Shown here piece after piece: positions 8,019-63,961 of a DNA stretch of 64,000 nt; positions within the stretch are counted from its first letter, which is position 1, and each line of letters starts with the position of its first letter. Under the pieces are notes generated by a model. It worked only from the letters and a program-made list of their open reading frames with translations. It was not told the DNA's origin and ran no database searches. The DNA lies in the IMG/VR virus record IMGVR_UViG_3300027793_000052, positions 124,001-188,000 of that record; one strand, written 5' to 3'. A program made the position numbers and the translations under genes.

Positions 8019-9026
8019 ATGGATTTTGGAACAATAAAAAATACATTCACAGAGATTTTAATTGAATCTCACATTAAAGGTGATGACAAAGGTAAAAACT
8101 TATATAAAAAATTTTTAAGAACACTTAAAGAAAGTGAGACGTTAAAAACATATTTTGTTGCTTACAAAAATTTAGAAGATAAAACTTTTAATACAGAAAA
8201 TGAGGCCACCGAGTACATTAAAGAACATGTAAGTATTTTAAAAAAATATAAAGGTCAAAAAAGTATTTTTAATGAAAATAAAAAACTTATTAACTTATTA
8301 GAAAGTAATGGTTATAAAATTACACAAAAACCAAACGATTTACATAAAGCTTTAAATAATTTAATTCGCACGAATAAAGATGTTACAACAATTGATACTA
8401 TTATAGAATCCACAAATATTCTTAAAAAACATTTAATTACCCCCAAAACAAAATTAAATGAAAACCTATACTCTAAAACTAAATTTTTTAAAGAGGGTGA
8501 TAAAATAAAAGTAACTAGATTACCAGAAGAAAAACCTAATGACAGACTACCTAGAGGTTATGAAAATCTTAAAATAGGTGATGTATTGACAGTTAATAAA
8601 ATATGGAGTAACACTGAAGGTGTGATTTACGGTACAGATTTTAGTGATAATTATGGTTTATCTAATTATGACGTAGAAAATTTAACTGGTAAAAAATTAA
8701 AAGAAAATAAAGTAAACCCAAACAAATTTTTAAATATTGTAGTTGAAAAATACAATGAAAAATACTCCAACATGGATGAACAAGATAAAAAAATCATTAA
8801 AACAATTTTATCTAGTAATGAAAAAGAAAAAGAAACATTATTAAATAATTTAAAAAAGGAGTCTATTAATTTAATCACTAAATTAGTAAAAGAATATGAT
8901 AATAATTTAGAGGTTAAAGTTAAGTTATTGGAATCAAAAGATTTTATTTATAATATGGGTTTTAATAAAGAAACTTTTAAAGATGATGTTGTTAAAATAT
9001 ACGATTTAATGAAAAATTTAAGTTAA
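8019..9026 (+). CDS. Putative prohead core/head-associated protein with an inserted SH3/KOW-like domain
   Basis: Directly after portal, helical and charged; the segment FKEGDKIKV...LKIGDVLTV is bounded by LNE and LKE sites. Confidence 0.55.
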   Translation: MDFGTIKNTFTEILIESHIKGDDKGKNLYKKFLRTLKESETLKTYFVAYKNLEDKTFNTENEATEYIKEHVSILKKYKGQKSIFNENKKLINLLESNGYKITQKPNDLHKALNNLIRTNKDVTTIDTIIESTNILKKHLITPKTKLNENLYSKTKFFKEGDKIKVTRLPEEKPNDRLPRGYENLKIGDVLTVNKIWSNTEGVIYGTDFSDNYGLSNYDVENLTGKKLKENKVNPNKFLNIVVEKYNEKYSNMDEQDKKIIKTILSSNEKEKETLLNNLKKESINLITKLVKEYDNNLEVKVKLLESKDFIYNMGFNKETFKDDVVKIYDLMKNLS

Positions 9027-9047
9027 TTAAAAATAATTTAAAAAAGT

Positions 9048-9082
9048 AAAGGGTCTGAAATAAAAAATTCAGACCTTTTTTA
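9048..9082 (+). terminator. Intrinsic terminator
   Basis: aaagggtctgaa-loop-ttcagacctttttt. Confidence 0.8.
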
Positions 9083-9136
9083 TTTTTTCTTAATATTTAT
9101 TAAAATAAATATAACCTACAAAAAAAAGTTTACATA

Positions 9137-11695: not shown

Positions 11696-14005
11696 TTAAA
11701 AATAAATTTCTTTAATTATACCTTCTAATTCTAAAGGCGGTACACCAATCCAATCTTTTATATTATTAGACATAACAGGTTTACCACCCTTACTTCTATC
11801 TACAGCGATTGTTATATGTGGTGTTGTTGTTTTTGTAACTAATTCCGTATCTACTTTGACTGCCATTACATTATCTAACTCACCTACATGTGTCACAACT
11901 AAGTCAATTGATTGACCTAACAGTGGTTTATAAACTTCTTTTATAGGACCCATGTTTATTGTCATATGGTGTGCAATAACTTCCCAACCCTTAGGTATGT
12001 TTAAAGATTTAATCAACCTAATTCTAGATTCTTCTGTTAATACAACAGCAGAATAAGATACTTTTTTAACTTCTTCTTTTATTAACTTTTTGAAAATCTC
12101 CCTCTCAATTCTATCTTTCTCAACACCTATTTCCCTACCTTTAAAACCTTGTTTTATTAATTCTTCACCAGATGTTGTTACTTTATAATTTATGAATGCT
12201 TCAACTGATTTTGGGTTTATGTTGTTCATTTGACCAAAAATTCTTAACGTATCGTCATCCATTTTTATAGCGTCATATCTTTCTCTAAGTTTATATAAAT
12301 CACCACTATTAGTCTTAAAAAATTGTATTAAGAAGGCAATCTTTTTACCTTCTTCAGACGTATACTTAAGTGTGTCAACCAAGTACTTTTCAACCAACTT
12401 AGGTTCATTACTTACAAGTAAAGTAGCTATAAGTACCAATGGATTTCTAGTTTCTATTAATGGATCCGTAGTCACTACAAGTCTACCGAATATCCAATCC
12501 CATAGGTTTAGGTTGGTTATCATTTGTGTGAAATAACCAACAGACTGTGATTGTTTAACACCTTTTAAGAATTCATCCCTAATTCTTTCCTGTGATAGTG
12601 GTAAACCGTTACCACTTATTGGTGTTTTATCTTTAGTTATAGCGTCAACAATATCCTTATCTAATTGTGAACCAACTCTAGACGCAAATCTAATTGCTCT
12701 AAGTATACGTAATTTATCCTCATCAAAACGTTCTGAGGCTGAACCAACTGTTCTAACCACATTACCTTCTATATCACCAATACCACCAACTAAATCCACA
12801 ACCTCCCCTTTATCTATATCATAAAATAAAGCGTTAATGGTTAAGTCACGTCTTTTAACATCTTGGTCTATTGTTGTAAACTCAACAGAGTCTGGTCTAC
12901 GTCCTTTTCCCACATCTTTCCGGAACGAAGCGAGTTCAAACTCACCATCAGGTGTTATAACATTAACTACACCAAATTGTTCACCAACTTCAATTGTTCT
13001 AAACATGTTTAACATGGATTTAACAACTTCAGGTGTGGCATTTGTGGCCAAATCAAAATCCTTAGGTTCCTGACCTAATAATAAATCTCTAACAGCACCA
13101 CCAACAACATATAACTCATAACCGTTATCTTTAAAGATTTGGTTCATTTGTTTTACCGAGTTAGGTAAATCCATATTTATCTTTTTCCTTACAACATTTT
13201 CATTTATGTTAGGTTTTTTATATAAAGGATTTTTTATATATATTGTTAAATCTTGTTCGTTTGATTTATAGTATCTAAAATCTTTAAAAAAAGACCAACA
13301 TTTATTATCATAACACTCACTATTATCATGGTTGTTATAACCCACCCGACCTAAGTAATCAGAACCCAAATCATCTTTATTATAAAATTTAACTAAAATT
13401 AAATCTTTACCAAGAGTTGTTATACCTTCATCTATTATGACCCCCAAATCCATATTAAACTCAGCATCAATATCATCACCGTTAATTAATACCTCCATAC
13501 CTTTTTTTAACAAACCAATTGTGGGTATGATAAATTCTTTATCAGTTTCATCATCACCAATAACATCTTCCACCCAACTATATTCATCATATTCTTTTAC
13601 TATACTTTCATTTATTTTGGTTGAAACTAATATTTTTAAATGTTCAGAATCCTCAAATTTTGTATAATCTCTCATAAATGACCAACATTTTTTACCACGA
13701 CAATCTTCTTTGTAGCTATCCCACATAGGTGTTGACATGTTGATTACATTCTCGTCAAATTTTTTATCGTTAAATTTAACTAAAATAACATCGTTACCCA
13801 CATGCTGTCTAATACCGATAATAAAACCAATATCATCATTAAAAATAACATCTTCATCTTGTAAATCATAACCATTTACCAAAACAGTATCATTAATATT
13901 TAACATTTCTTTTGATACTGCAGGGACAAACCCACTACCTAGTGTATCATTAACCCATTCAAAATCATCAAATTCTTTTAACATTTTTTTAATAAGATCT
14001 TTCAT
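11696..14005 (-). CDS. cca: Multidomain protein: two N-terminal repeats, class II CCA-type tRNA nucleotidyltransferase, C-terminal 2H phosphoesterase
   Basis: VVGGAVRDLLLG..PKDFDLAT, RRDLTINALFYD, RFDEDKLRILRAIRF. C-terminal HHMTI...PHITI are paired HxT motifs. The PAP-type GRRF signature is absent (VGEQFGVV). Confidence 0.88.
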   Translation of the reverse strand: MKDLIKKMLKEFDDFEWVNDTLGSGFVPAVSKEMLNINDTVLVNGYDLQDEDVIFNDDIGFIIGIRQHVGNDVILVKFNDKKFDENVINMSTPMWDSYKEDCRGKKCWSFMRDYTKFEDSEHLKILVSTKINESIVKEYDEYSWVEDVIGDDETDKEFIIPTIGLLKKGMEVLINGDDIDAEFNMDLGVIIDEGITTLGKDLILVKFYNKDDLGSDYLGRVGYNNHDNSECYDNKCWSFFKDFRYYKSNEQDLTIYIKNPLYKKPNINENVVRKKINMDLPNSVKQMNQIFKDNGYELYVVGGAVRDLLLGQEPKDFDLATNATPEVVKSMLNMFRTIEVGEQFGVVNVITPDGEFELASFRKDVGKGRRPDSVEFTTIDQDVKRRDLTINALFYDIDKGEVVDLVGGIGDIEGNVVRTVGSASERFDEDKLRILRAIRFASRVGSQLDKDIVDAITKDKTPISGNGLPLSQERIRDEFLKGVKQSQSVGYFTQMITNLNLWDWIFGRLVVTTDPLIETRNPLVLIATLLVSNEPKLVEKYLVDTLKYTSEEGKKIAFLIQFFKTNSGDLYKLRERYDAIKMDDDTLRIFGQMNNINPKSVEAFINYKVTTSGEELIKQGFKGREIGVEKDRIEREIFKKLIKEEVKKVSYSAVVLTEESRIRLIKSLNIPKGWEVIAHHMTINMGPIKEVYKPLLGQSIDLVVTHVGELDNVMAVKVDTELVTKTTTPHITIAVDRSKGGKPVMSNNIKDWIGVPPLELEGIIKEIYF

Positions 14006-14040
14006 ATATAGTAAATATCTACAACTACTGCATATTTATA
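14006..14040. promoter_or_regulatory. Divergent pair of candidate late promoters (cca gene / prohead protease)
   Basis: GATATTTAC on the minus strand (14011-14019) and CATATTTATA on the plus strand (14031-14040). Confidence 0.5.
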
Positions 14041-14055
14041 TAATAAACTTTAAAA

Positions 14056-14868
14056 ATGAAAATTTTAAAACCAGGTGAAACAAATACTAGGGGATTTTTA
14101 GTTGAATATGATTCCGGATTTGTGGCCTCTAATTTATCTTATAAAGGTAAAACAAATTCTGATTTAATTAAAGAACACCTACAATATTTAAACGAGTTTA
14201 AATCGGGTACAAACATAGGGAAAGATGGTAGTTTACCAGAAACAATCATAGTATACGCTGTATTACAAAAATGGGGAATTGAAAATAAAAACGGTAGAAT
14301 TTACCCTAAAGAAATTCTAGAAAGAGAAAACAAAAGATATCAGGAATATATAAAAATGGGTACATCTTTAGGTGAGTTAAACCACCCAGAGTCTTCAATC
14401 ATTGACGCCGATAGAGTATCACATAGAATTACTGAAACATGGTGGGATGGTAAAACTTTAATGGGTAAATTAGAACTTGACACAACACCGGGTTACCACA
14501 AAATGGGTATTATATCTTCTGTTGGTGATAAAGTGGTTAACATGATTAGAAAAGGTTGGACAGTTGGTATTTCATCTCGTGGTGTTGGATCCCTTAAACA
14601 AGAAGGTGGTAAAAATGTTGTACAAGATGATTTCGAATTAATATGTTGGGATATTGTTACATCACCGTCTACCCCAGGTTCTTGGATATCTTCTGAGGAA
14701 GGTGATTTAAAACAGTTTACAGAATCTTATATAAAAGATAACGGTTGTAATGGTTACACATGTCAATGGAATTTAATGGAAGAAAATGAACCAACCGAAA
14801 TCCATTTTAATTCAATACCTACATCAAATAATAAAATATTAAATAGCTTAAATAAATTTTTAAAATGA
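14056..14868 (+). CDS. Prohead core protease (T4 gp21-like)
   Basis: NKNGRIYPKEIL, GELNHP, VGISSRGVGS, DFELICWDIVTSPSTPGS. Confidence 0.92.
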   Translation: MKILKPGETNTRGFLVEYDSGFVASNLSYKGKTNSDLIKEHLQYLNEFKSGTNIGKDGSLPETIIVYAVLQKWGIENKNGRIYPKEILERENKRYQEYIKMGTSLGELNHPESSIIDADRVSHRITETWWDGKTLMGKLELDTTPGYHKMGIISSVGDKVVNMIRKGWTVGISSRGVGSLKQEGGKNVVQDDFELICWDIVTSPSTPGSWISSEEGDLKQFTESYIKDNGCNGYTCQWNLMEENEPTEIHFNSIPTSNNKILNSLNKFLK

Positions 14869-15254
14869 AAAAAGTAATTAAATTAACAGAAAACGATATT
14901 GAAAAGTTGGTTAAAAAAATAATCAACGAAGGTAAAACTATCAATGAAGATTTACCAGAAAGAGAACAGGAAAGAAAAGATACTAGTTTCCGTAGAAGAG
15001 AATTTCAACCTTATAACAGAGAAAAACAAATTCAAAAACTTTTTGGTAAATACGCTGAAGATGTACCACCTCAAGTAATCCAATATTTAAGAAAAATACC
15101 TGGAACAATAGTTAAGAGGTTAGTTGATATCTATGGTTATGACAGGATACAAGGTTATTTGGATAAGGCTTCAGTAAATCAAGTTCAAGAGAATTATAAC
15201 TTTGATGAAATAATTTCAGAAAAAAATAAATCTAACAAAAAATTAGATATTTAA
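14865..15254 (+). CDS. Hypothetical late protein with KKVIKLTENDIEKLVKKIINE N-terminus
   Basis: ATGA overlap with the protease gene; the N-terminal motif recurs inside 24836..25780. Confidence 0.65.
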   Translation: MKKVIKLTENDIEKLVKKIINEGKTINEDLPEREQERKDTSFRRREFQPYNREKQIQKLFGKYAEDVPPQVIQYLRKIPGTIVKRLVDIYGYDRIQGYLDKASVNQVQENYNFDEIISEKNKSNKKLDI

Positions 15255-15257
15255 TTT

Positions 15258-16173: not shown

Positions 16174-16643
16174 TGTCTATATTTTTTAGGTAGACCAACA
16201 CGATCTGCCAAATCTTGAAATATACCTTTATGATTTCTGGCTTCAGTGTTTTTATGTCCATGTGAAGCGTGTATTAATTCATGTTTCAGAATATCTTCAA
16301 CATATTCTTTATCTTCTAAGGCTTTGGGATGAATTTTCATAATTCCAAGGTCTTTTTCGTTTTCAGGGTGTTTAAATGATCCAATTTTACCAGCTTTAAT
16401 ATTGTCATCAACTTTTACCACAATATTATCATCACTAACTGGTTCTTCACCAGTTATATCTTTATAAGCATTTTTTACTTTTTTACCAATCTCATCTTTC
16501 ATATGACTAATTTTTTTAGTCTCAGCAGGATATTTTGACTTTTTAATAATTTTTTTTTGCATATAATCTGCTTTATCAGAAACGTCGTTTTTTGATTGAT
16601 TTTCTACAAATTCCCTTAAAATAAGTCTGATTTTATCTTTCAT
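16170..16643 (-). CDS. SprT-like zincin metalloprotease
   Basis: KHELIH (HExxH) with downstream H (HKGIFQDLADRVG); N-terminus MKDKIRLILRE. Confidence 0.7.
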   Translation of the reverse strand: MKDKIRLILREFVENQSKNDVSDKADYMQKKIIKKSKYPAETKKISHMKDEIGKKVKNAYKDITGEEPVSDDNIVVKVDDNIKAGKIGSFKHPENEKDLGIMKIHPKALEDKEYVEDILKHELIHASHGHKNTEARNHKGIFQDLADRVGLPKKYRH

Positions 16644-16786: not shown

Positions 16787-18268
16787 ATGGCAAACGAAAA
16801 GAAATCAATTATTGAGGAAGCTCTTCTTGAGGCACAAGAAATTGACGCCACTTTCAAATCAAACGCAAAAGAAATACTGTCTCAGACGATGAGTTCAGAA
16901 ATTGAAGAAATGGTAAAGGAATCATTAACTGGTTCGAAAAAAAGATTGAAAGAGGATGAAGAAGAGGAAGAAGAATTAGACCTTGACTTAGACACTGAAG
17001 AAGAAGAGGAAGAATTAGACTTGGGTTTAGACACTGAAGAAGAAGGTGAAGACGAGACTGAAGAAACCGAAATGGATCTTGACTTAGGTGGTGAAGAAGA
17101 GGAAACTGAGATTGAAGATTTAGACCTTGACTTTGAAACCGAAGAAGGTGAAGAAGAGGGGGAAATGGATTTAGATCTTGGTGATGAAACTGAAGAAGTT
17201 ATGGGTGACGTTGAAACTGTGGATCTTACACAAGAACCATTATCAGACGTAATCTCAGTATTCAAAAAAATGGGTCCTGAAGATGAAATCGAAGTTGTTA
17301 ACGACAACGGTATCGTAACTCTTAAAGACAACAAATCTGGTTCTGAATACAGAATCGAAATGAACCCGGCAGGTGAAGTTGCTAGCGTTGAAGCTGGTGA
17401 AATTGAACTTGGTGAGGGTGAAGAAGGTTCTGATAACGTTATCTACGAAATAGTTGTGGATGATGGTGAGGAAGAAATGGAAGACGAAATGTCTTACATG
17501 GATTATGCCGAAGACGAAATGTCTTACATGGGTGATAAAATGTCTTATATGAACTATAAGAAAAGTGGTTTAAAAAATCCTGAAAAGGCTGATTTAGACA
17601 AAGACCACGATATTACACCTTATGAAAAGAAAAGAGGTATGGCTATCGAAAAATCTATGGAAGACGAGGGTGAAGACCATATGGATTATATGAAACATGA
17701 TGATGAAGATCACATGGATTATATGTCACGTACTTTAGGTGCTGGCAGAAGATTTGGACGTAATGGTTTAGACAAACCAAAAGCTGCTCCAAGACATCTT
17801 TATGTTGGTGAATCTAAAACTCCACAGATTTCAAAACTCATCAAAGAAAACACAAACTTAAATACCAGAAATTCTGAACTTGAAGTAGAAAATAAGGAAC
17901 TAAAAGAAAACTACGAAAAAATGGTAGACGCTCTTAAACAGTTCAGAACAAAACTTCAAGAAGTGGCTGTGTTCAACAGCAATCTTACTTACGCAGTAAG
18001 ATTATTCACTGAAAATACAACTACTAAAGAAGAAAAGAATGACATATTAAAAAGATTGGATTCGGCTAAATCTTTAAAAGAATCTCAATCAATTTATAAA
18101 CAACTTGTTAAAGAAATTTCTAACAGTAAGGCACCTATAAAGGAAACTATTGAAGAAAAAATCAATAACACTTCTTCTAGTGGAGCATTAATCAGTGAAC
18201 AAAGTGTTTTTGTACACCCAGAGATTGAAAAAATGAAAAAACTTTGGGGTTACAGTTACAAAAAATAA
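16787..18268 (+). CDS. Prohead scaffolding/core protein (T4 gp22 position)
   Basis: Very acidic with a C-terminal coiled coil and many (I/L)xE sites; immediately upstream of the major capsid gene. Confidence 0.75.
   Translation: MANEKKSIIEEALLEAQEIDATFKSNAKEILSQTMSSEIEEMVKESLTGSKKRLKEDEEEEEELDLDLDTEEEEEELDLGLDTEEEGEDETEETEMDLDLGGEEEETEIEDLDLDFETEEGEEEGEMDLDLGDETEEVMGDVETVDLTQEPLSDVISVFKKMGPEDEIEVVNDNGIVTLKDNKSGSEYRIEMNPAGEVASVEAGEIELGEGEEGSDNVIYEIVVDDGEEEMEDEMSYMDYAEDEMSYMGDKMSYMNYKKSGLKNPEKADLDKDHDITPYEKKRGMAIEKSMEDEGEDHMDYMKHDDEDHMDYMSRTLGAGRRFGRNGLDKPKAAPRHLYVGESKTPQISKLIKENTNLNTRNSELEVENKELKENYEKMVDALKQFRTKLQEVAVFNSNLTYAVRLFTENTTTKEEKNDILKRLDSAKSLKESQSIYKQLVKEISNSKAPIKETIEEKINNTSSSGALISEQSVFVHPEIEKMKKLWGYSYKK
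17480..17531 (+). repeat. 22-bp direct repeat with 30-nt period (EDEMSYM) in the scaffold gene
   Basis: gaagacgaaatgtcttacatgg at 17480 and 17510. Confidence 0.8.
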
Positions 18269-18299: not shown

Positions 18300-20069
18300 A
18301 TGGGATATTTATTAAAATCAGGTGAGGTTGGTAATATCGGATTAAAGCATCAAAAAGCAATCCGTGAGGCAACTGTAAACAAATGGGAATCTTTAGGGTT
18401 CTTAGAGGGTCTTGAAGGCCACATCAGAGAAAACATCGCTTTGTTATATGAAAACCAAGCATCAACTCTTATCAGTGAAACATCTACTGCAGGTGGAGGA
18501 TCTACTGGATCTTTTGAAACTGTAGTGTTTCCAATCGTAAGACGTGTATTCTCTAAATTATTAGCTAACGATATCGTATCGGTTCAAGCTTTAAATTTAC
18601 CAATCGGTAAATTATTCTACTTCGTTCCAAAAACGTCTGATAGAGTTGATGACGCAGCTTTCTTAGCTGGTACAAACGGTGGTACATCTAAACATAGAGG
18701 TTTAGCTATCGCTAGTTGTGTTAACTGTCCTGAATCTACATTTAGTGGTTGTACTAAAAACCTTTATGATATTTTCTATAACGATGGATTATACGATCAA
18801 TCAAAAGGTGAAATTACTCTTAAAGTTGTTTCTGGTACAGCAGTTGTATTAACAGCTTGTACAAGTGGAAGTGAATATGTAGCAGGAAAAACTCCAGCAG
18901 CTTCTGATGGTTCATTACGTTACCAAAAATTTGAAGTTAAAGGTTTTAGCAGTACAGCTCCTGGACGTTTAGTAGGTCCTGATGGAAATGAAATGGATAC
19001 AGAATCTTTCTTAGCTTCATTAACAGTTGTAGCTGGTACTCAAGTATTAGATCCTTCTGGAAATGTAATTTTCAATCAAGGTGACCAAATTCCTTTCCGT
19101 TTAGTAACTCAAAAATACGGTAGAGGTATTGTTGACTACGGTGATATTTGTTCAGCAGATGGTAAATTGTATATTGAATTAGATTTCACAAGTCCAAATT
19201 GTGTTTCTTGTTCAACTAAAACATTTGATGGATATATCGGGGCTAATTATACAGGAACTTCTGTAACATCAGCATCTTTCGTAGCTATCGCTTGGAGACA
19301 ATACGCTGATTTAGAAGCTGAATCTAACATGGGTGAAGTTTCTTTTGAACTTGAATCTGTAACTGTATCGGTTACTGAACGTAAGTTAAGAGCTACTTGG
19401 ACTCCTGAATTAGCACAAGACGTTAGTGCATTCCACAACATCGATGCTGAAGCTGAATTAACAGCATTATTATCTGAGCAAGTTGCGGCTGAAATTGACC
19501 GTGAAATCTTAATGGATTTACGTAAAGGTGCAGCATGGCAATTACGTTGGGATTACAACGGATGGAAGCGTTTACCAAACAACAATGGTTACACTCAAAA
19601 AGATTGGAACCAAACTTTGATGACGGCTGTCAACCAAATCTCAGCTCAAATCCACAAATCTACGTTAAGAGGTGGAGCTAACTTCGTTGTTGTATCTTCT
19701 GAGGTATCAGCAGTATTAGACGATTTAGAATACTTCCACGTATCTAACGCAGCTCCTGAGCAAGACCAATATAACATGGGTATTGAAAGAGTAGGTTCAT
19801 TAAATGGTCGTTACACTGTTTACCGTGACCCATACGCTCCAGCGTACTCTGTTATCATCGGACATAAAGGTAAGTCATTACTTGACACTGGTTACATCTA
19901 CGCTCCGTATGTACCAATGCAGTTGACTCCTACAATGTACAATCCGTTCAACTTCGTACCAGTAAAGGGTATAATGACACGTTACGCCAAAAAAATGGTT
20001 AATAATCGCTTCTATGGCCATATTCGTGTAGATGGATTACGTACATTCGACGTAAGAGAATTACGTTAA
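18300..20069 (+). CDS. Major capsid protein (T4 gp23-like)
   Basis: FPIVRRVFSKLLANDIVSVQ, RKLRATWTPELAQD..AFHNIDAEAEL..LSEQVAAEIDREI, GYIYAPYVP, GIMTRYA. Confidence 0.96.
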   Translation: MGYLLKSGEVGNIGLKHQKAIREATVNKWESLGFLEGLEGHIRENIALLYENQASTLISETSTAGGGSTGSFETVVFPIVRRVFSKLLANDIVSVQALNLPIGKLFYFVPKTSDRVDDAAFLAGTNGGTSKHRGLAIASCVNCPESTFSGCTKNLYDIFYNDGLYDQSKGEITLKVVSGTAVVLTACTSGSEYVAGKTPAASDGSLRYQKFEVKGFSSTAPGRLVGPDGNEMDTESFLASLTVVAGTQVLDPSGNVIFNQGDQIPFRLVTQKYGRGIVDYGDICSADGKLYIELDFTSPNCVSCSTKTFDGYIGANYTGTSVTSASFVAIAWRQYADLEAESNMGEVSFELESVTVSVTERKLRATWTPELAQDVSAFHNIDAEAELTALLSEQVAAEIDREILMDLRKGAAWQLRWDYNGWKRLPNNNGYTQKDWNQTLMTAVNQISAQIHKSTLRGGANFVVVSSEVSAVLDDLEYFHVSNAAPEQDQYNMGIERVGSLNGRYTVYRDPYAPAYSVIIGHKGKSLLDTGYIYAPYVPMQLTPTMYNPFNFVPVKGIMTRYAKKMVNNRFYGHIRVDGLRTFDVRELR

Positions 20070-21793: not shown

Positions 21794-21826
21794 AGAATAC
21801 CCAAAAAGATAATATTTATATAACAC

Positions 21827-22672
21827 ATGAGAGAATTAATTAAGAAAATATTAAAAGAGGCACGTGTACCTAGGGAAGAAAGGGTGGAACTATATAAGGA
21901 CGATAATATAATTGTTGTTGTTCCACTAACTCATAAAGCCTTACAAAAGTACGCAAACCAATGTCAATGGTGTATTAATAGTGATTTAGGTGAATGGGAA
22001 GATTACCATAAAGGAATGCATGCTATAATCATCCAAAGAAATCCAAAAAAAGATAAAATCGGTATAACAGGACATCGTGTGGCTGAAGAGATTTTACTTA
22101 TGGGCAGGTGGGATGAAGGTGGTTACACTTTTAAAGATGTTTGTGATATATTAGGTTATCAATTTAAAAATGAAACCGATATGGGTGATTATTATGTAAC
22201 AGTTACAAATGACATAAATAACTTCGCGACCAATATAGTTTATTACTCACCAGAAAATGGTATATACGACCAAGAAGATAATTTCTTATGGAACTTTCAT
22301 TACGAAATATCTGATATACCAAACGTAACACCAAATGTTGTCCATATTATGGATGATTATCTTTGGAGAAGTTCCTCATTAAAAGAATCAGAAGACGGTT
22401 TTGATTGGGCTAAAGAATTAATTGATGCTGATGGTATTAATACTGAGGTTTTAAATTATTTAAAAACAAATTATCCAAAAAAAACCGAATCAACGCCTTA
22501 TTTTGGGTTAAAATCTTTTATCATAATTGATGATAAACCATATTATTTTGATTATAGCTCCAAAAAATTAATATTAAATAAAATATATTGGGAGATTGAG
22601 GATGAATTTAACCATGTAGTTAAAAGTGTTTTAAGACGTACAATTAGACATTATATCAATAGTCTAATCTAA
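21827..22672 (+). CDS. PcfJ-like domain protein with tagged N-terminus
   Basis: YKDDNIIVVVPLTHKALQKYANQCQWCINS; starts MRELIKKILKE. Confidence 0.65.
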   Translation: MRELIKKILKEARVPREERVELYKDDNIIVVVPLTHKALQKYANQCQWCINSDLGEWEDYHKGMHAIIIQRNPKKDKIGITGHRVAEEILLMGRWDEGGYTFKDVCDILGYQFKNETDMGDYYVTVTNDINNFATNIVYYSPENGIYDQEDNFLWNFHYEISDIPNVTPNVVHIMDDYLWRSSSLKESEDGFDWAKELIDADGINTEVLNYLKTNYPKKTESTPYFGLKSFIIIDDKPYYFDYSSKKLILNKIYWEIEDEFNHVVKSVLRRTIRHYINSLI

Positions 22673-25811: not shown

Positions 25812-26089
25812 TATTTATTAAATTTCTTTTCTAAAAACTTATAGATAACACCTTTATTGTGTTTTTCGATTAAATTTGTTTTATGTACATGTAAATCGTA
25901 CAACTCCTTACAATTATCATTAAGTTGTTTAATGGTTTCATATTCTTCATCAGTTAACATGATGTTAGTATTTATTTGTTCAGGATAAAATTTATCAGTG
26001 GATGGTACTAAATAACCACCCTTTGTAAATTTATATGGTTTTGTTTTAACCACATCTTCTTTTAATATTTTCTTAATTAAATCTTTCAT
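25811..26089 (-). CDS. Hypothetical tagged protein
   Basis: Likely start MKDLIKKILKE at 26089 (TAATG overlap). Confidence 0.6.
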   Translation of the reverse strand: MKDLIKKILKEDVVKTKPYKFTKGGYLVPSTDKFYPEQINTNIMLTDEEYETIKQLNDNCKELYDLHVHKTNLIEKHNKGVIYKFLEKKFNK

Positions 26090-57586: not shown

Positions 57587-57970
57587 TTAAAATTTTGCCT
57601 GTTTAAATATTGTTATCATACTTCTATCCCCATTAGGGTTATATTTTGGTATATTTGAAATTCTATCTGAAATTGGTGTGTTAAAAGTTCGACCCAATTC
57701 TTGCCAATCTCTTATTTTATCCAATCTAAAAGTTTTCCAACCTGGTTGTTCGGTATCAGTAACACCTGCATATTGATATGCACGTAATATTAAATTTTCT
57801 CTAGGAGAGACACCTAACACGTAAGGTTCAATACTACGTCGACCTGGGTTGATTGTTTCATCACCCTCATAATAAATTTCAATTAAATCATGATTTGTGA
57901 TAGCCTTTTCAACTTCATTCCTACTAGCTTCTTCTACAATAATTTCTTTTAGGAGATTGTAAAGCTTCAT
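57587..57970 (-). CDS. Stand-alone WYL-domain protein
   Basis: IYYEG...GRRSIEPY.LG...LRAY...GWKTFRLDKI. Confidence 0.82.
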   Translation of the reverse strand: MKLYNLLKEIIVEEASRNEVEKAITNHDLIEIYYEGDETINPGRRSIEPYVLGVSPRENLILRAYQYAGVTDTEQPGWKTFRLDKIRDWQELGRTFNTPISDRISNIPKYNPNGDRSMITIFKQAKF

Positions 57971-59070: not shown

Positions 59071-59089
59071 AATTAATTTGGGTGCTATT

Positions 59090-60652: not shown

Positions 60653-60671
60653 AAAGAAAACTTAAATATTC

Positions 60672-63530
60672 CTAATTTTCTTGTAATTCTTCAAAACGAT
60701 CCTTTATCATATAATTTGAAGGTTTACCATTTAAATCCCAAAATTTAATCTCACTATCACTCATAGTCATAAGTTCCTCCAATGTATCTTGGTCTTCAGG
60801 GTTAGTTGCTACACCACCTATTAGTTCTAATTCCTTAGATGTGAAAAATTGTTTATTTTCAGGGTTATCTATAATTAACGACTCTCTAATATGTAATGGG
60901 AATACAACTAAAAGTGGCTCAACTTTTTTATTAAAAGCTTCAATGTATTTTGGTACATTATAATCACCAGTCAAATCGGGATTTTTCTTAATTTGGTCTT
61001 CTGTAATTAAATAACAGTTAAATTTAAGTTCACCTTCAGGTGTTTTTTTAGTCTTACTGAAAGAAATATCGGCATGTGATTTACGACTACCGTTATTAAC
61101 ATAATACAAAGTATCACCTAAATTAACATGAATGTTATCACGAATTATTAATTCCATGTGGGCCTGTCTTGGTAAGTCTCTACCATTTTTATCCAAACCT
61201 CTTTTAAGGTACGATTGAACGGTTTTTTTAACTTTAGATTTGTTAGCTATATCAACTAAAGGTATTTGTTTATTATAAATTTTTTCTAAATACCCATAAT
61301 AAAAATCAACAAATTCTTTACCTTTACCATCCAATAATAATCTAATAGCCTTAGCTAAGAATTTCTCAATATATTTAGGTATTGTTTTACCCTTAATAGT
61401 ATTACCTGTTAATTTAACTTTACCACTTGGTTTTAGAATGGCATAATTCTTTCTAGACAAGTTAATGGTAGCGTCCATAATATCATCGATATCAAGACCC
61501 ATAGCACCAAACATATATCTTTCATTATATTCAGCAACATCTGCATCTATACCTGTATAAACCTCATCTTTTTTAACAAAACGATGTAAACCCTTACCAT
61601 TATACGTTCTATTTTCAACATCTTCAGGACATGAAAAGTTAACACCATCAGTATCTAACACTAAAGGTGTATAACCTCTATCCATGAAAAATTTAATCAT
61701 TAAACGAAGGTATTGTCTACCTGTACAAGTAATCATTTCACCTATATCAATATCACCCCAAGGAAAAATATAAGGTGCTGAAATAGAACCAAAAGCTGAG
61801 TTATTTAAAATTTTAATAGGTAATTGTTTTTTGTCATACATAGATGATAATTTCATATTACCTTTTGCTGCCTCGTCATTCATTAATTTTTTATACTTAT
61901 TACGAGTATCAGAAAGATATTTTAACATGGCTCTCAAAGCTCCTGTAATGTCACAACTTGGGAATACTTCATGTGTTAATTGTATGGACGGATAAAGTGA
62001 TGCGTAGTCAAATTTAGCCACCTTCTTACTATACCCTAAGTGTAATAACCTCGATAAACCACCTGTGAAATCTCTTTTGGGTAGTATATCAGGTAATGCC
62101 AAACCATTTTCATAAGACCAAGACATCATTAATAATTTCCACATTGTTGCCGTACCCATAGTTATTGAACGGTTAAATGTTGTTGGTACTAAAGCTGCCG
62201 TTAAAAAACCTGCTTGTGTGTAAATATCATCTACTTGCTCAGTTTCCAACAAGTCATCCGTAAGATATTCTGTAATTAAAAATCTACCGTCAACCTCTTC
62301 CCACTTATCTTCATAACCATCAATAACAACCATCTCACCTTTTTTATCTTCAAATAATTTAGGTTCAGGTTTAATACCATCTAAATCATACCATTGACCA
62401 CTAGTTGGGTTGTACCAATATTTTTTATTCTGAACCCACATTCTACCTAATTGACCCCCGTCCACATAAACACGATTAGGTCTTTCTACTTTGGCTTCTT
62501 TAGCGATATATTTTAAACCTGCCTCTTTTAAGTTTGAATTTAATGCCTGTGCCTGTCTAACCCTATGTAAAGTATCTAAAATGTTAATACCCCACATAAC
62601 TGTTTGTTCATATTTTTCTAATTCAGCACCTAACTTAAGGGACGCTGTTTTACGATACATAGGTATTTCAGGATGTCTTGTTTTAATAATACCTTTAGTG
62701 TTTATTGTGGTTGTTTTATCACCTATCTTACTAATAACAAAAGCTTCATTACTAATACCTAAGATTCTCATTCTACCTAAGATATACTTCCAGTCAAAGT
62801 TTTCTGAATTATAACCTGTAATAATAGAAGCATTACGTTCATGTAAAATGTTAAAAAATTCTTTTAACATTCTACGTTCAGTTTCTTCACTCCAATTACC
62901 ACTTTCATCATAGGAGTCAATAATCTTACGAAAACCACGATTGTCTTTAATCCCAATCAAAAATATGTGACCATCTTCAGGATCTAATGAGGTGGTCTCA
63001 ATATCAAATACTAACTTATGAACCTCAGTATAATCATCAAAACCTTTAAATAAACGTTTACCCGTTTGTATCATAAACTGTTCGATGGGTTGTACCATTT
63101 GAATTAGGTCTTTTCTTTTCCAAGGGTCTAAACCACCTTTTTTAAAGAAGTTTATTAATTCTCTATATGTACCAGAAGTTTTAACAATAAATTTAAAACC
63201 ATCTTCTAAACGTTCATCACCGTCAGTTCTAAGTTTCTCTGTGAAAATACCGAATTTTTTGGCTTCAGCACGCATTCTATCCATGTCATCACCATAGAAA
63301 CCACTGCCTCTAAGTGATTTTGTCCATAAGAAAGGTGTAAATTTTTGGGTTTTTATCATTTTACCCTTTTTAGGGTCATCGATAAATGTGTAAACTCTAT
63401 CGGTTTCATCTACCGACCAGTCCCCAGTTTGGGGTAACTCTACGGCTACAATATATTTTTCAGGGTCTTGGCCTTCTAGAAACACCTTAATATCTTCGGG
63501 TGTTGCTTGTTTAATTTCTTTTTTACTCAT
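60672..63530 (-). CDS. polB: DNA polymerase family B
   Basis: Exonuclease FDIETT, GYNSENFD, YLTDD; polymerase KFDYASLYPS, KQLPIKILNNSAFG, LDTDG. Confidence 0.95.
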   Translation of the reverse strand: MSKKEIKQATPEDIKVFLEGQDPEKYIVAVELPQTGDWSVDETDRVYTFIDDPKKGKMIKTQKFTPFLWTKSLRGSGFYGDDMDRMRAEAKKFGIFTEKLRTDGDERLEDGFKFIVKTSGTYRELINFFKKGGLDPWKRKDLIQMVQPIEQFMIQTGKRLFKGFDDYTEVHKLVFDIETTSLDPEDGHIFLIGIKDNRGFRKIIDSYDESGNWSEETERRMLKEFFNILHERNASIITGYNSENFDWKYILGRMRILGISNEAFVISKIGDKTTTINTKGIIKTRHPEIPMYRKTASLKLGAELEKYEQTVMWGINILDTLHRVRQAQALNSNLKEAGLKYIAKEAKVERPNRVYVDGGQLGRMWVQNKKYWYNPTSGQWYDLDGIKPEPKLFEDKKGEMVVIDGYEDKWEEVDGRFLITEYLTDDLLETEQVDDIYTQAGFLTAALVPTTFNRSITMGTATMWKLLMMSWSYENGLALPDILPKRDFTGGLSRLLHLGYSKKVAKFDYASLYPSIQLTHEVFPSCDITGALRAMLKYLSDTRNKYKKLMNDEAAKGNMKLSSMYDKKQLPIKILNNSAFGSISAPYIFPWGDIDIGEMITCTGRQYLRLMIKFFMDRGYTPLVLDTDGVNFSCPEDVENRTYNGKGLHRFVKKDEVYTGIDADVAEYNERYMFGAMGLDIDDIMDATINLSRKNYAILKPSGKVKLTGNTIKGKTIPKYIEKFLAKAIRLLLDGKGKEFVDFYYGYLEKIYNKQIPLVDIANKSKVKKTVQSYLKRGLDKNGRDLPRQAHMELIIRDNIHVNLGDTLYYVNNGSRKSHADISFSKTKKTPEGELKFNCYLITEDQIKKNPDLTGDYNVPKYIEAFNKKVEPLLVVFPLHIRESLIIDNPENKQFFTSKELELIGGVATNPEDQDTLEELMTMSDSEIKFWDLNGKPSNYMIKDRFEELQEN

Positions 63531-63622
63531 ATAAAACTCTGTTTGGGACGGGTTACAGATAACCTCTCGTTTATAAATTAATAACTAATAAAATTTATAT
63601 AAATAAAATGATATTGTGAATA

Positions 63623-63961
63623 TTATTTTTGTTTAATAATTAATTCACCTAAAACTTCTATCAGACCAACCAATTTTTGAAATTCAACTTGTGACATTTC
63701 AACATTTTCAGATAATTCACATAATTGGTCTAATTTTTCTTTAAATTCTTTTTTTGTTTTTTCAATATCTAACTTACCTTCCATAGCTTTTTTATAGTAA
63801 GGAAGTTTAACCCTAAAGTGATGGTAAGTTAACATCGCTGGGCCACCTTTTTCTTTAGCATTGTTTGTGATTTTTTCAGCTCCAGCTAATCTTTTTTCAG
63901 CAAAAGTTTTAAAACTTTCACTATTTTCTAATTCTTCTTTTATTAATTTTCTTATATCCAT
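63623..63961 (-). CDS. Hypothetical tagged protein
   Basis: Likely start MDIRKLIKEE at 63961 (TAATG overlap with an upstream truncated ORF). Confidence 0.6.
   Translation of the reverse strand: MDIRKLIKEELENSESFKTFAEKRLAGAEKITNNAKEKGGPAMLTYHHFRVKLPYYKKAMEGKLDIEKTKKEFKEKLDQLCELSENVEMSQVEFQKLVGLIEVLGELIIKQK

What the first reader, a model, noticed from the sequence alone, without database searches (positions are those of the whole stretch)
8019..63961. Shared N-terminal 'MKxLIKKILxE' tag on unrelated proteins: candidate capsid-cargo loading and injection system
Seen: at least nine unrelated ORFs begin with, or contain internally, an amphipathic basic helix ending in (I/L)-x-E. These are 14005(-) MKDLIKKMLKE (CCA/2H), 26089(-) MKDLIKKILKE, 21827(+) MRELIKKILKE (PcfJ-like), 16643(-) MKDKIRLILRE (SprT), 57970(-) MKLYNLLKEIIVE (WYL), 63961(-) MDIRKLIKE, 14865(+) and internal 25352(+) KKVIKLTENDIEKLVKKII(N/K)E, and 15333(+) MNFIDRVILE. 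The same (I/L)xE ends occur in the capsid (LISE-TST), scaffold and protease, and most tagged genes have the ATATTTAT late motif upstream. Known: T4 gp21 cleaves after E in (I/L)xE, and the T4 10-aa capsid-targeting sequence (MKTYQEFIAE) loads internal proteins such as IPI into heads for injection. Inference: this phage uses a portable tag to package a diverse enzyme payload (RNA repair, protease, nucleic-acid sensor) for delivery at infection.
Basis: partly seen in the sequence, partly recalled or inferred. Interest (0 to 1): 0.85.

Follow-up and report, generated by a model that had tools for sequence, protein, structure and literature searches.

The report
Portable N-terminal tag on phage proteins
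A freshwater T4-like phage and many uncultured relatives put the same 11-residue N-terminal peptide (MKxLIKKILKE) on dozens of unrelated proteins. It looks like T4's capsid-targeting, protease-cleaved address label, but packaging and cleavage have not been shown.

Summary
Four unrelated window proteins start with M-[KR]-x-[LK]-I-[KR]-[KL]-[IM]-L-[KR]-E. A fifth (63967) is confirmed through its orthologue. Two more share a 22-residue variant with the same core. The WYL protein (57970) and 15333 are not statistically supported.

The tag is widespread. An IMG/VR scan gave at least 138 copies, almost all at the first ATG of an ORF, on about 60 unrelated families. These include a CCA-adding enzyme, a small zinc metallopeptidase, NUDIX, an ADP-ribosyltransferase, GNAT and superoxide dismutase. 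In 596 Gb of cellular genomes there is one genuine copy, and it sits on a phage contig.

The window encodes a T4 gp21-type prohead protease, and its capsid protein has a conserved L-[IL]-x-E site at the propeptide boundary. The tag ends in an invariant E followed by a small or polar residue. Tag-like copies also sit at junctions of fused modules. Tagged genes carry the same promoter motif as the structural genes.

Best reading (about 0.55): a capsid-targeting propeptide analogous to the T4 CTS, which loads enzymes for injection. This would be a new variant of a known kind. Packaging, cleavage and injection remain inferred.

The parts
13973..14005 (-). Canonical tag MKDLIKKMLKE at the N-terminus of the 769-aa CCA-adding/2H protein (gene 11696-14005)
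   Evidence: PolyA_pol/CCA domain at residues 298-418, PHROG tRNA nucleotidyltransferase, two HxT motifs in the C-terminal domain. The L034 orthologue carries MKNLIRKILKE directly on the CCA domain.
12074..12103 (-). Internal tag-like REIFKKLIKE, between the CCA domain and the C-terminal 2H-like domain of the same protein
   Evidence: It lies between PHROG matches 295-643 and 650-751.
26057..26089 (-). Canonical tag MKDLIKKILKE on a 92-aa protein of unknown function (gene 25811-26089). The start overlaps the stop of upstream gene 26089-27636.
21827..21859 (+). Canonical tag MRELIKKILKE on a 281-aa protein of unknown function (gene 21827-22672). 'PcfJ-like' is only a weak lead.
   Evidence: Promoter motif at 21812-21819.
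16611..16643 (-). Tag MKDKIRLILRE on a 157-aa small zinc metallopeptidase (SprT-like/selecase-like, HELIH motif; gene 16170-16643)
   Evidence: Promoter motif at 16649-16656.
63935..63967 (-). Degenerate tag (M)LMDIRKLIKE on a 112-114-aa protein next to the DNA polymerase. It is 11 residues long if translation starts at the TTG at 63967.
   Evidence: The L104 orthologue starts MKNLIKKILKEEIATSKSFEDFAEKRF. The orthologue in Flavobacterium phage immuto starts MRLLELLRE.
14865..14930 (+). 22-residue long tag MKKVIKLTENDIEKLVKKIINE on the 129-aa protein just downstream of the protease (candidate prohead core or internal protein)
   Evidence: Conserved in the L034 and L003 orthologues.
25352..25423 (+). 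Internal copy of the long tag (MKLKKVIKLTENDIEKLVKKIIKE) at the junction of two modules in ORF 24836-25780. A second internal core, LLKKILRE, lies at 25076-25099.
   Evidence: In L001 the orthologue of the C-terminal module is a separate gene that begins at this tag.
14056..14868 (+). Prohead core serine protease of the T4 gp21 family (Peptidase_S77). N-terminus ...GFLVE at residues 14-17.
   Evidence: Pfam 8e-30 and PHROG 2e-42. Aligns to T4 gp21 structure 5jbl at 3.7e-20 with the ELNHP and SSRG motifs. The N-terminal G-x-L-[VI]-E is conserved in relatives.
16787..18268 (+). Candidate scaffolding protein: very acidic, lies between protease and MCP, conserved in 80 relatives
   Evidence: Position and composition. 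No Pfam or PHROG hit and no significant BLASTP match to T4 gp22, so the assignment is by context only.
18300..20069 (+). Major capsid protein (Gp23 family). Predicted maturation site L57-I58-S59-E60|T61 at nt 18468-18482.
   Evidence: Pfam Gp23 4e-72, PDB T4 gp23 2e-24. The site ENQASxL[IL]xE| is conserved in 88 relatives and is followed by a hypervariable linker.
8019..8066 (+). 16-residue N-terminus MDFGTIKNTFTEILIE|S of the 335-aa protein downstream of the portal: a candidate propeptide of a head protein
   Evidence: [IL][LI]xE[SG] at this position is conserved in most of 34 orthologues. Promoter motif at 7996-8003.
6032..7993 (+). Portal protein (T4 gp20 family)
   Evidence: Pfam Portal_T4 1.4e-74.
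21812..21819 (+). Late-type promoter motif ATATTTAT, 7 nt upstream of the ATG. Other copies: 16649-16656(-), 14012-14019(-, variant GATATTTAC), 14032-14039(+), 7996-8003(+), 5991-5998(+), 2520-2527(+), 16723-16730(+), 24811-24818(+), 27651-27658(-).
   Evidence: The positions are specific in 2,310 genes of related loci. The same motif precedes structural genes in Flavobacterium phage immuto.
15333..15818 (+). 161-aa basic protein, MNFIDRVILE|AKKKGKK. Possible core or internal protein, but it does not carry the canonical tag.
   Evidence: Core matrix score 2.1, not significant. The L034 orthologue keeps MNIDKLILE. In L001 and L003 the C-terminal module is a separate gene starting MNIR(R/K)IIKEELLKE.
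57587..57970 (-). WYL-domain protein, MKLYNLLKEIIVEE.
   Evidence: Pfam WYL 2.7e-05. Core matrix score 6.8, below the 99th percentile of 7.2. No orthologue found in the fetched loci.

Best explanation
The 11-residue peptide M-K-x-L-I-K-K-[IL]-L-[KR]-E is a portable N-terminal propeptide. It is a short basic amphipathic helix ending in a hydrophobic-x-Glu site. The proposed mechanism has five steps, by analogy with T4:
1. The tagged protein is made late in infection, together with the head proteins.
2. The helix binds the acidic scaffolding core of the assembling prohead, so the protein is enclosed.
3. The gp21-type prohead protease cuts after Glu11, as it cuts the capsid protein after L-I-S-E60, and the cargo is released inside the head.
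4. The cargo leaves with the DNA at the next infection.
5. In the new cell it acts before any phage gene is expressed. In this window the cargo is a CCA-adding/2H tRNA-end repair enzyme, a small zinc metallopeptidase and several unknowns. In relatives it includes NUDIX, ADP-ribosyltransferase, GNAT and superoxide dismutase.

Shown here: the tag and its strict N-terminal position, its portability, its restriction to viruses, the protease, the matching capsid site, and the shared promoter motif. Inferred: binding to the core, cleavage, packaging and injection.
For: 1. The tag is not chance. Four window N-termini form a clique far above three null models. In 394,000 aa of window plus 80 related loci, 17 of the 18 best matches to tag residues 2-11 lie at an ORF start.
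2. It is portable and virus-specific. IMG/VR holds at least 138 copies in 120 stretches, nearly all at the first ATG, on 60 families with no detectable similarity beyond the tag. In 596 Gb of cellular genomes there are 11 pattern matches: 10 spurious and one on a phage contig.
3. Selection acts on the peptide. Synonymous codons vary at every position. In the metallopeptidase family, collected by cargo homology rather than by tag, 64 of 67 members keep M[KR]xxI[KR][KR][IV]L[KR]E. E11 is invariant and I5 is present in 63 of 64, and a variable linker follows.
4. The shape fits a cleavage site. I5, L9 and E11 are invariant across 60 families. Position 12 is small or polar in 95% (background 48%) and is never basic or Pro. 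Position 13 is hydrophobic in 67%. The AlphaFold model shows an N-terminal helix (residues 2-15, pLDDT about 50-58), a linker below 50, then a confident domain.
5. The machinery is present. There is an S77/gp21 protease with the His and Ser motifs. The MCP site L-[IL]-x-E sits at the propeptide boundary in 88 relatives and maps within about 10 residues of the T4 gp23 maturation site. Other head-module proteins have similar conserved sites.
6. Tags mark the boundaries of modules that occur both fused and split. Examples are the 24836 ORF against a separate L001 gene, the L042 and L038 multi-module proteins, the internal REIFKKLIKE in the CCA protein, and the decay of that protein's former tag once new modules displaced it from the N-terminus.
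7. Tagged genes use the structural-gene promoter motif. RNA contigs cover the CCA and metallopeptidase genes.
8. Tags of unrelated cargo within one genome share a flavour, ILKE or LLRE (3 of 2,000 permutations reach the observed value). The flavour tracks the MCP site type.
9. Cargo types (ART-PolyVal, zincin peptidase, NUDIX, GNAT) match those of injected phage proteins (PMC5512222). The T4 precedent is in PMC3012670, PMC9026906 and PMC5694885. T4's own propeptides MAKINELLRE, MELITELFDE and MNEPQLLIE have the same form.
Against: - There is no proteomic or biochemical evidence for packaging, cleavage or injection, and no cultured phage with the canonical tag was found.
- The scaffold assignment rests on context only.
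- The tag is basic, whereas the T4 propeptides read here (gp24, Alt, gp21) are neutral to acidic, so the mode of binding may differ.
- Tagged genes have a tighter promoter-to-ATG spacing (-11 to -14) than most structural genes (-20 to -25). This leaves room for an RNA-level or cassette explanation.
- Several other recurrent N-terminal modules exist in these phages. If all were capsid tags, the packaged repertoire would be unusually large.
- Tagged genes are scattered through the genomes rather than confined to head modules. One degenerate copy sits beside the DNA polymerase with no late motif.
- The flavour covariation rests on only two clades.
Confidence: 0.55

Rival explanations
1. The peptide has a function, but not capsid loading. 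The N-terminal amphipathic helix could be a common handle for another shared partner. Possibilities are a protease-adaptor degron (it loosely resembles the Met-basic-hydrophobic N-terminal ClpX motifs, recalled from memory), a chaperone or assembly factor, membrane or DNA association, or a removable inhibitory propeptide unrelated to packaging.
For: The data show only a conserved, portable N-terminal helix under peptide-level selection and detached from the fold. Nothing ties it physically to the capsid. Tagged genes are spread over the genomes. Several other N-terminal modules coexist.
Against: This does not explain the invariant terminal Glu with a small P1' residue, which matches the MCP maturation motif of the same phages. 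It does not explain the internal copies at module junctions in head-cluster proteins, the co-occurrence with a gp21-type protease, or the use of the structural-gene promoter motif.
Confidence: 0.2
2. A start cassette rather than a protein signal. The conserved promoter, about 5-7 nt of spacer, the ATG and the first 11 codons would form a unit kept for leaderless translation or as a recombination handle that shuffles accessory genes. The peptide would be a passenger.
For: Of 67 tagged genes with the motif, 53 have it at -11 to -14 from the ATG, which implies leaderless or near-leaderless mRNAs. Other genes peak at both -21 to -23 and -11 to -13. Codons in the tag are slightly more A-rich than in the rest of the genes. 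Tandem arrays and rapid turnover of tagged genes fit cassette shuffling.
Against: More than half of the tagged genes have no promoter and lie inside operons with the same tag. Upstream DNA is not conserved between window copies. Leu, Ile, Lys and Glu codons vary freely while the residues are fixed. Orthologues diverge in DNA and in non-critical residues but keep I5, L9 and E11. Internal copies at domain junctions cannot serve initiation. Constraints continue to positions 12-13.
Confidence: 0.12
3. A compositional artefact. In a genome of 29% G+C, which is rich in K, I, L, E and N, basic amphipathic N-termini ending in IxE arise by chance.
For: K, I, L, N and E are the five commonest residues. 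Loose (I/L)xE matches are frequent, at 4.3 [IL][ILVM]xE per 1,000 aa. The weaker members (57970, 15333, 9713) are within or near chance.
Against: The pair scores and the clique are far beyond three null models. Matches are N-terminal in 17 of the 18 best hits in 394,000 aa. There are at least 138 N-terminal copies in viral contigs against one genuine copy in 596 Gb of cellular DNA.
Confidence: 0.02

Closest known systems
Capsid targeting sequence (CTS) of phage T4 internal proteins IPI/IPII/IPIII, and the similar 10-residue propeptides of gp24 and Alt
   Same: A short N-terminal propeptide (10-19 residues in T4, 11 or 22 here). It is an amphipathic helix ending in hydrophobic-x-Glu, it is shared by otherwise unrelated proteins, and the genome encodes a gp21-family protease, a gp20 portal and a gp23 capsid protein. 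The T4 propeptides MAKINELLRE (gp24), MELITELFDE (Alt) and MNEPQLLIE (gp21) have the same layout. T-even internal proteins are described as diverse defence proteins that share only the CTS (PMC3012670).
   Different: There is no sequence homology to the T4 tags. The new tag is strongly basic (K2, K6, K7, K10) and one residue longer. The cargo range is much wider (about 60 families, including recognisable enzymes). Copies also occur at internal module junctions. Tagged genes carry a promoter 5-7 nt from the ATG. Function is untested here, whereas the T4 CTS was shown to package foreign proteins (PMC9026906).
Propeptides of inner-body and ejection proteins of giant phages phiKZ, 201phi2-1 and SPN3US, cut by gp21-related proteases
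   Same: A diverged gp21-type protease cuts after Glu in a short motif in many head proteins. Paralogues keep identical N-termini (SPN3US gp53 and gp54). Propeptides contain multiple sites (PMC5694885, PMC9026906).
   Different: Those motifs are (A/S/G)-x-E and the propeptides are often longer than 100 residues. Here the motif is [IL]-[IL]-x-E and the tag has 11 residues, as in T4. The phage here has T4-like head genes, not phiKZ-like ones.
Polyvalent proteins and other virion-packaged effectors (Iyer et al. 2017, PMC5512222)
   Same: The domain repertoire overlaps: ART-PolyVal, zincin metallopeptidase, NUDIX and GNAT. The proposed role is also the same: enzymes delivered with the DNA at the start of infection.
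   Different: Polyvalent proteins join many domains in one giant polypeptide. Here most cargoes are separate small proteins, each carrying the same address peptide.
Encapsulin cargo-loading peptides
   Same: A short portable peptide that loads unrelated enzymes into an HK97-fold shell.
   Different: Those peptides are C-terminal, bind the shell directly and are not cleaved. There is no protease, scaffold or DNA. The resemblance is in logic only and was not tested here.

Membership tests
T4-type capsid targeting sequence (CTS) / gp21-cleaved N-terminal propeptide | Located at the extreme N-terminus, about 10-20 residues long | tested here: met
   17 of the 18 best matches lie at ORF starts. At least 138 IMG/VR copies lie at the first ATG. 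Length is 11 residues, or 22 in the long variant.
T4-type capsid targeting sequence (CTS) / gp21-cleaved N-terminal propeptide | Ends in a (L/I)-x-E processing site | tested here: met
   L9 and E11 are invariant across 60 families. E11 is invariant in 64 orthologues of one family. P1' is small or polar in 95%. This is a sequence-level test only.
T4-type capsid targeting sequence (CTS) / gp21-cleaved N-terminal propeptide | Shared by proteins that are otherwise unrelated | tested here: met
   60 single-linkage families remain after the tag is removed. There is no similarity beyond the tag in the window proteins.
T4-type capsid targeting sequence (CTS) / gp21-cleaved N-terminal propeptide | The genome encodes a gp21-family prohead protease and a capsid protein processed at the same kind of motif | tested here: met
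   Peptidase_S77 at 8e-30 and 5jbl at 3.7e-20, with the ELNHP and SSRG motifs. The MCP L-[IL]-x-E site is conserved in 88 relatives near the T4 gp23 maturation point. The cleavage itself is inferred.
T4-type capsid targeting sequence (CTS) / gp21-cleaved N-terminal propeptide | A gp22-type scaffolding core to which the tag binds | tested here: inconclusive
   An acidic 493-aa protein between protease and MCP is conserved in 80 relatives. It has no Pfam or PHROG hit and no significant BLASTP match to T4 gp22.
T4-type capsid targeting sequence (CTS) / gp21-cleaved N-terminal propeptide | The propeptide is removed in mature virions (neo-N-terminus after the Glu) | not testable with these tools
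   This needs virion or viral-fraction proteomics. No cultured carrier of the tag was found.
T4-type capsid targeting sequence (CTS) / gp21-cleaved N-terminal propeptide | The tag is sufficient to package a foreign protein into heads | not testable with these tools
   An experimental criterion (Mullaney and Black 1996, as reviewed in PMC9026906).
T4-type capsid targeting sequence (CTS) / gp21-cleaved N-terminal propeptide | Sequence homology to the T4 tags | tested here: not met
   T4 gp24, Alt and gp21 N-termini read from NC_000866 share only the hydrophobic and Glu pattern, not the sequence or the charge. So this is an analogue or a new tag family, not a homologue.
Peptidase S77 (T4 gp21 prohead protease), for gene 14056-14868 | Profile match above the curated cut-off, with the catalytic His and Ser motifs | tested here: met
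   104 bits against a cut-off of 27. The alignment to 5jbl keeps ELNHP and SSRG. That these are the catalytic residues is my recollection of the T4 literature.
Zincin metallopeptidase (SprT-like / minigluzincin), for cargo gene 16170-16643 | An HExxH motif and a zincin fold | tested here: met
   H121, E122 and H125 are invariant in 48 sequences. Pfam SprT-like is below its cut-off in the window protein (20.8 against 25.6) but is precomputed for most homologues. The AF2 model's best PDB match is selecase 4qhi (probability 0.92, TM 0.51 by target, E 0.05), which is weak.

The most novel reading that the evidence does not exclude
A large clade of abundant, uncultured freshwater and marine T4-like phages marks its injected proteome with a recognisable 11-residue address peptide, and possibly with further tag classes such as KKVIKLTENDIEKLVKKIINE, MK(I/Y)(I/L)ITESQ... 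and MNL(Q/K)ENIRRILKEE. If so, the set of proteins a phage delivers with its DNA could be read directly from metagenomic sequence, much as signal peptides predict secretion. That set would include tRNA-end repair enzymes, a metallopeptidase, ADP-ribosyltransferases, NUDIX, GNAT and superoxide dismutase. The tag could also serve as a ready-made cargo-loading handle.
Probability: 0.45. Interest if true: 0.8.

Novelty: new variant of a known kind. Interest (0 to 1): 0.65.

Why it matters
In T4, proteins injected with the DNA include IPI*, which blocks a restriction enzyme, and Alt, which modifies RNA polymerase. They are the phage's first move against host defences, yet outside a few model phages the injected set is unknown because it takes virion proteomics of cultured phages to find it.

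If this tag is a capsid-loading signal, it would give a sequence-only way to list candidate injected effectors in phages that have never been cultured. More than 60 families are already visible. It would also extend the T4 CTS principle to distant T4-like phages of aquatic bacteria, and it would offer a short peptide for loading foreign proteins into such capsids.

If the tag has another role, a virus-restricted, strictly N-terminal peptide on dozens of unrelated proteins would still need an explanation.

Tried and rejected
- Megablast of 22 kb of the window against cultured phages gave no match.
- A tblastn of a 26-aa tag-plus-DFDW peptide against cultured phages gave no match.
- A blastn of promoter plus tag against cultured phages gave only AT-rich noise in T5-like phages. 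No cultured carrier of the canonical tag was found.
- A full-text search for the tag strings found no relevant paper.
- A DNA-level repeat or cassette as the cause of the window copies is rejected. The upstream regions are unrelated and codons differ.
- WYL protein 57970 as tagged: not supported.
- 15333 as the same tag: not supported by the matrix, although it may be a separate core-protein propeptide.
- 'PcfJ-like' for 21827: no Pfam or PHROG hit, and only a weak language-model lead.
- Homology of the scaffold to T4 gp22: not detectable by BLASTP.
- Overall enrichment of ATATTTAT in the window: absent, at 24 copies against 24 expected. Only its positions are informative.
- RNA-run contigs were laid on 11696-17000. 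They show that the region is present in RNA libraries, and that contig ends lie near the predicted starts (14050 and 16631). Contigs have no direction and DNA carry-over cannot be excluded, so this is weak support only.
- The covariation between tag flavour and MCP site rests on two clades and is not counted as independent evidence.

Full report
**What the window is.** The 64 kb have 26-35% G+C and come from a distant T4-like tailed phage. The window encodes:
- a large terminase interrupted by an intein (2549-5707);
- a T4 gp20-type portal (6032-7993);
- a gp21-type prohead serine protease (14056-14868);
- a very acidic protein in the scaffold position (16787-18268);
- a gp23-type major capsid protein (18300-20069);
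- a long sugar and glycosyltransferase-like gene block, not annotated in detail;
- a family B DNA polymerase.

The nearest cultured relatives by capsid protein are only 29-43% identical: Rhodothermus phage RM378, Microcystis phage Mel-JY01 and Flavobacterium 'immuto' phages. The same DNA is present in freshwater metagenomes and metatranscriptomes.

**Checking the observation.**
- The N-termini of four proteins form a clique. They are the CCA-adding protein (14005-), a 92-aa protein (26089-), a 281-aa protein (21827+) and a small metallopeptidase (16643-). Their BLOSUM62 scores over residues 2-11 are 44, 40, 37, 28, 25 and 21. In three null models (internal 10-mers, pooled shuffles, column shuffles) the 95th percentile of the best pair among all genes is 26-27.
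- Beyond residue 11-14 these proteins are unrelated.
- With an 8-residue core matrix the four score 18.7-23.7, against a 99.9th percentile of 11.4.
- The gene at 63961 scores 13.7. Its orthologue in locus L104 begins with the canonical MKNLIKKILKE. From the TTG at 63967 the window peptide is exactly 11 residues long and in register.
- The protein just after the protease (14865) and an internal site of ORF 24836-25780 share a 22-residue module that ends in the same core, LVKKII(N/K)E.
- The WYL protein (57970) is borderline and 15333 is not significant.

**How far the tag reaches.** Eighty loci with a 59-80% identical capsid protein were fetched.
- I scored residues 2-11 of the tag at every position of 394,000 residues, so the Met was not counted. 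Of the 18 best hits, 17 lie at the first start codon of an ORF.
Nearly all have a stop a few codons upstream and no earlier ATG. Several form tandem arrays of small genes.
- The same pattern in 596 Gb of bacterial and archaeal genomes gave 11 matches. Ten are short or internal ORFs. The eleventh is a phage contig inside a Prochlorococcus single-cell assembly. The tag is therefore essentially restricted to viruses.
- With the tag removed, 140 complete tagged proteins fall into 60 families with no detectable similarity.
- Pfam recognises among them Fe/Mn superoxide dismutase, the CCA/poly(A) polymerase head domain, NUDIX, ART-PolyVal, GNAT, SprT-like, LRR, GP88 and L5 gp82.
- Forty-six of the 120 stretches also encode homologues of window proteins, 13 of them the capsid protein. 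Most carriers therefore belong to this phage group.

**Anatomy of the tag.**
- Across the 60 families I5, L9 and E11 are invariant, and M1, K2, K6 and K7 are nearly so.
- Hydrophobic residues fall at positions 1, 4, 5, 8 and 9, basic ones at 2, 6, 7 and 10. This gives an amphipathic helix whose hydrophobic moment is in the top 3% of its own shuffles, like T4 Alt's MELITELFDE.
- The constraint continues two residues further. Position 12 is small or polar in 95% of families (background 48%) and is never basic or proline. Position 13 is hydrophobic in 67%. After that the sequences diverge.
- Codons vary freely. Leu4, for example, uses TTA, CTA, CTG, CTT and TTG, and the DNA upstream of the window copies is unrelated. 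The copies are therefore not a DNA repeat. Because the scan was defined at the amino-acid level, this shows only that the DNA is not identical.
- A less biased sample came from collecting the metallopeptidase family by homology of the cargo. Of 67 members, 64 keep M-[KR]-x-x-I-[KR]-[KR]-[IV]-L-[KR]-E, with E11 present in all 64 and I5 in 63. A variable linker (residues 16-23) and then the conserved domain follow.
- An AlphaFold model built on 48 sequences has a confident catalytic domain (pLDDT 80-95). The tag is a separate helix (residues 2-15, pLDDT about 50-58), joined by a segment below 50.
- The domain has an invariant HExxH. Its best solved match, though weak, is the mini-metallopeptidase selecase.

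**Link to head maturation.**
- The protease matches Peptidase_S77 (8e-30) and the T4 gp21 structure 5jbl (3.7e-20). It keeps the ELNHP and SSRG motifs, which align with the catalytic His and Ser (residue roles from memory).
- The capsid protein of 88 relatives has ENQAS-x-L-[IL]-x-E, then a hypervariable Ser/Thr/Ala/Gly linker, then the conserved GSFETVVFPIVRR. In the alignment to mature T4 gp23 the T4 neo-N-terminus falls about ten residues from this site. In T4 itself the site is FLTE|A.
- The protein after the portal (8019) keeps [IL][LI]xE[SG] at residue 13-17 in most of 34 orthologues. The protease keeps G-x-L-[VI]-E near residue 17, reminiscent of T4 gp21's LIE-9 (PMC9026906).
- Tags also sit where modules are joined. 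The C-terminal half of ORF 24836-25780 follows an internal long tag, and in L001 it is a separate gene that starts with that tag. In L042 and L038, multi-module proteins near the capsid gene carry the long tag between modules.
- In 15333 the module that follows ...IKEDYINE| is a separate gene in L001 and L003, starting MNIR(R/K)IIKEELLKE.
- The CCA protein has REIFKKLIKE exactly between its CCA domain and its 2H-like domain.
- Its L034 orthologue carries the tag directly on the CCA domain. The window protein has gained two 128-residue N-terminal repeats together with a fresh tag at the new N-terminus. At the old position only ...PNINE remains.
- These patterns fit a signal that must be N-terminal plus a cleavage site that can also work internally. 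They do not fit a role in translation initiation.

**Expression.**
- ATATTTAT is not enriched overall, but it lies just upstream of TerL, portal, 8019, protease, scaffold, 24836 and 27636, and of the tagged genes 21827, 16643 and (as a variant) 14005.
- It is absent from upstream of the genes in the 33-57 kb block and of the polymerase.
- The cultured Flavobacterium phage immuto has TATTTATAA before its terminase, portal and other structural genes. I therefore read the motif as the late, structural-gene promoter of this group.
- Of 117 non-redundant tagged genes in IMG/VR, 47-55 have the motif 11-15 nt before the ATG.
- Over 2,310 genes the spacing is bimodal, with peaks at -21 to -23 and at -11 to -13. 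Tagged genes are almost all in the short class (53 of 67), which implies leaderless or nearly leaderless mRNAs. That class also contains terminase genes and homologues of window gene 30816-31211, which lies among the unannotated genes downstream of the head cluster.
- In metatranscriptome assemblies the CCA and metallopeptidase genes are covered. One contig starts at 14050, where the protease ATG is at 14056. In two runs contigs end at 16631, where the metallopeptidase ATG is at 16643. This is weak evidence, because contigs are undirected and DNA carry-over is possible.

**Lineage flavour.** Tags on unrelated cargo in the same contig are more alike (8.44 of 10 positions) than tags from different contigs (7.63). 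Only 3 of 2,000 permutations reach that value. Two flavours exist...ILKE and ...LLRE. Phages whose capsid site is LLxE mostly carry LLRE tags (12 of 16), and those with LIxE carry I[LI]KE or MLKE (6 of 6). This would be expected if all tags in a genome serve one genome-encoded partner. It rests on two clades only.

**Interpretation.**
- In T4, all internal head proteins reach the scaffolding core through a 10-19-residue CTS that gp21 then removes. The first ten residues of IPIII suffice to package foreign proteins. T-even internal proteins are a diverse set of defence proteins that share only the CTS (PMC3012670, PMC9026906, PMC5694885).
- The new tag has the same position, length, helical character and terminal motif, and it sits in genomes with the same machinery.
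- Its cargo includes an ADP-ribosyltransferase (a functional parallel to T4 Alt), a zincin peptidase, NUDIX and GNAT. These are domain types typical of proteins predicted or known to be injected (PMC5512222).
- The tagged CCA-adding/2H enzyme would suit immediate repair of damaged tRNA 3' ends. That is an inference.
- Not shown: binding to the core, cleavage, presence in virions, or injection.

I put this reading at about 0.55. The rivals are:
- another protein-level role for the helix (0.2);
- a promoter-plus-start cassette kept for leaderless translation or recombination (0.12). The short spacing favours it, but operon-internal tags, free synonymous variation and internal junction copies argue against it;
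- chance (0.02, effectively excluded).

**Comparison and novelty.**
- The tag works like the T4 CTS but is not homologous to it. It is basic rather than acidic or neutral, one residue longer, carried by far more families, and used at internal junctions. The tagged genes have a promoter 5-7 nt from the ATG.
- I found no cultured phage with it and no paper that mentions the sequence.
- I therefore class it as a new variant of a known kind, pending experiment.

**Not supported.** The WYL 'sensor' as cargo, 15333 as the same tag, the PcfJ label, and homology of the scaffold to gp22 were not supported.

Noticed in passing
window 13937-13972 and 13553-13588 (CCA protein residues 13-18 and 140-145); 22394-22411 (21827 protein residue 190); many IMG/VR loci such as L096, L132, L147, L155: A second portable element, (D/E)-F-(D/E)-W-(I/V), follows the tag after 0-8 residues in roughly a quarter of the tagged proteins. 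It also marks the start of the internal repeated modules of the CCA protein. What follows it is unrelated from protein to protein.
   Followed up: partly
L166, L170, L134, L153, L143, L180 and others: Other recurrent N-terminal modules occur on unrelated small genes of the short promoter-spacing class: MK(I/Y)(I/L)(I/V)TE(S/G)Q(Y/L)xx(L/I)..., MNL(Q/K)E(N/S)I(R/Q)RI(L/K)(K/R)E..., and M..LRQLIKEHLLLEKRI on a 137-aa family just after the capsid gene. They may be further tag classes.
   Followed up: partly
window promoter motifs; 2,310 genes of related loci: The TATTTAT promoter motif has a bimodal distance to the ATG: -21 to -23 or -11 to -13. The short class implies leaderless or near-leaderless late mRNAs and holds almost all tagged genes.
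   Followed up: partly
window 2549-5707 (+): The large terminase gene encodes 1,052 aa. It is interrupted by an intein with a LAGLIDADG homing endonuclease domain (Pfam LAGLIDADG_3 and Intein_splicing).
   Followed up: no
window 20111-21793 (+): A 560-aa HNH/Mom-like homing-endonuclease-type gene (PHROG 3339 at 5e-104; Pfam Mom and MTES_1575) is inserted directly after the capsid gene. In relatives a tagged gene usually sits there.
   Followed up: no
window 10084-11220 (+): A glutamine-synthetase-like protein (Gln-synt_C and Gln-synt_N) is encoded inside the head-gene cluster.
   Followed up: no
window 11696-14005 (-), residues 12-258: The CCA protein has two tandem repeats of about 128 residues, each with DxFxWV...CWSF(M/F)(R/K)D. 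They are inserted between the tag and the CCA domain and are absent from the L034 orthologue.
   Followed up: partly
window 457-2478 (+), 21827-22672 (+), 23606-24430 (-): Three window proteins share a segment of about 50-135 residues (with ...GTKWC/ATKWC...). BLASTP gives 5.5e-17 and 3e-07. This is a paralogous domain of unknown function. In 21827 it follows the tag directly.
   Followed up: no
window 31184-32125 (-) and 57967-59130 (-): Two paralogous DUF723/treble-clef zinc-finger proteins look like homing endonucleases. One also has a weak PvuRts1I-like N-terminal domain match.
   Followed up: no
L203 = L144 (QCKH01000009.1, Prochlorococcus sp. AG-409-L21 single-cell assembly, 63,985 bp): The only genuine tag copy in the cellular genome collection is on a phage-like contig in a Prochlorococcus single-cell genome. 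It has the promoter motif 11 nt upstream. This may be a host clue for some carriers, or a co-sorted virion.
   Followed up: no
L201 (Flavobacterium phage vB_FspM_immuto_3-5A, MW353176.1): This cultured distant relative uses the same TATTTATAA motif before its structural genes. It has tag-like N-termini (MKKSQLRQIIKEAL, MKKSQIVKAVQEVLEE, MRLLELLREAKE) and the capsid site IVSE|A. It could serve as an experimental model. Its gene immuto35A_188, annotated 'TiaS', is an orthologue of window 63623-63961.
   Followed up: partly
window 9713-9985 (+): A 90-aa protein with a predicted membrane helix starts MLKEILKE. Its core matrix score is 9.1, above the 99th percentile. It may be chance or a short tag on a membrane protein.
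   Followed up: no
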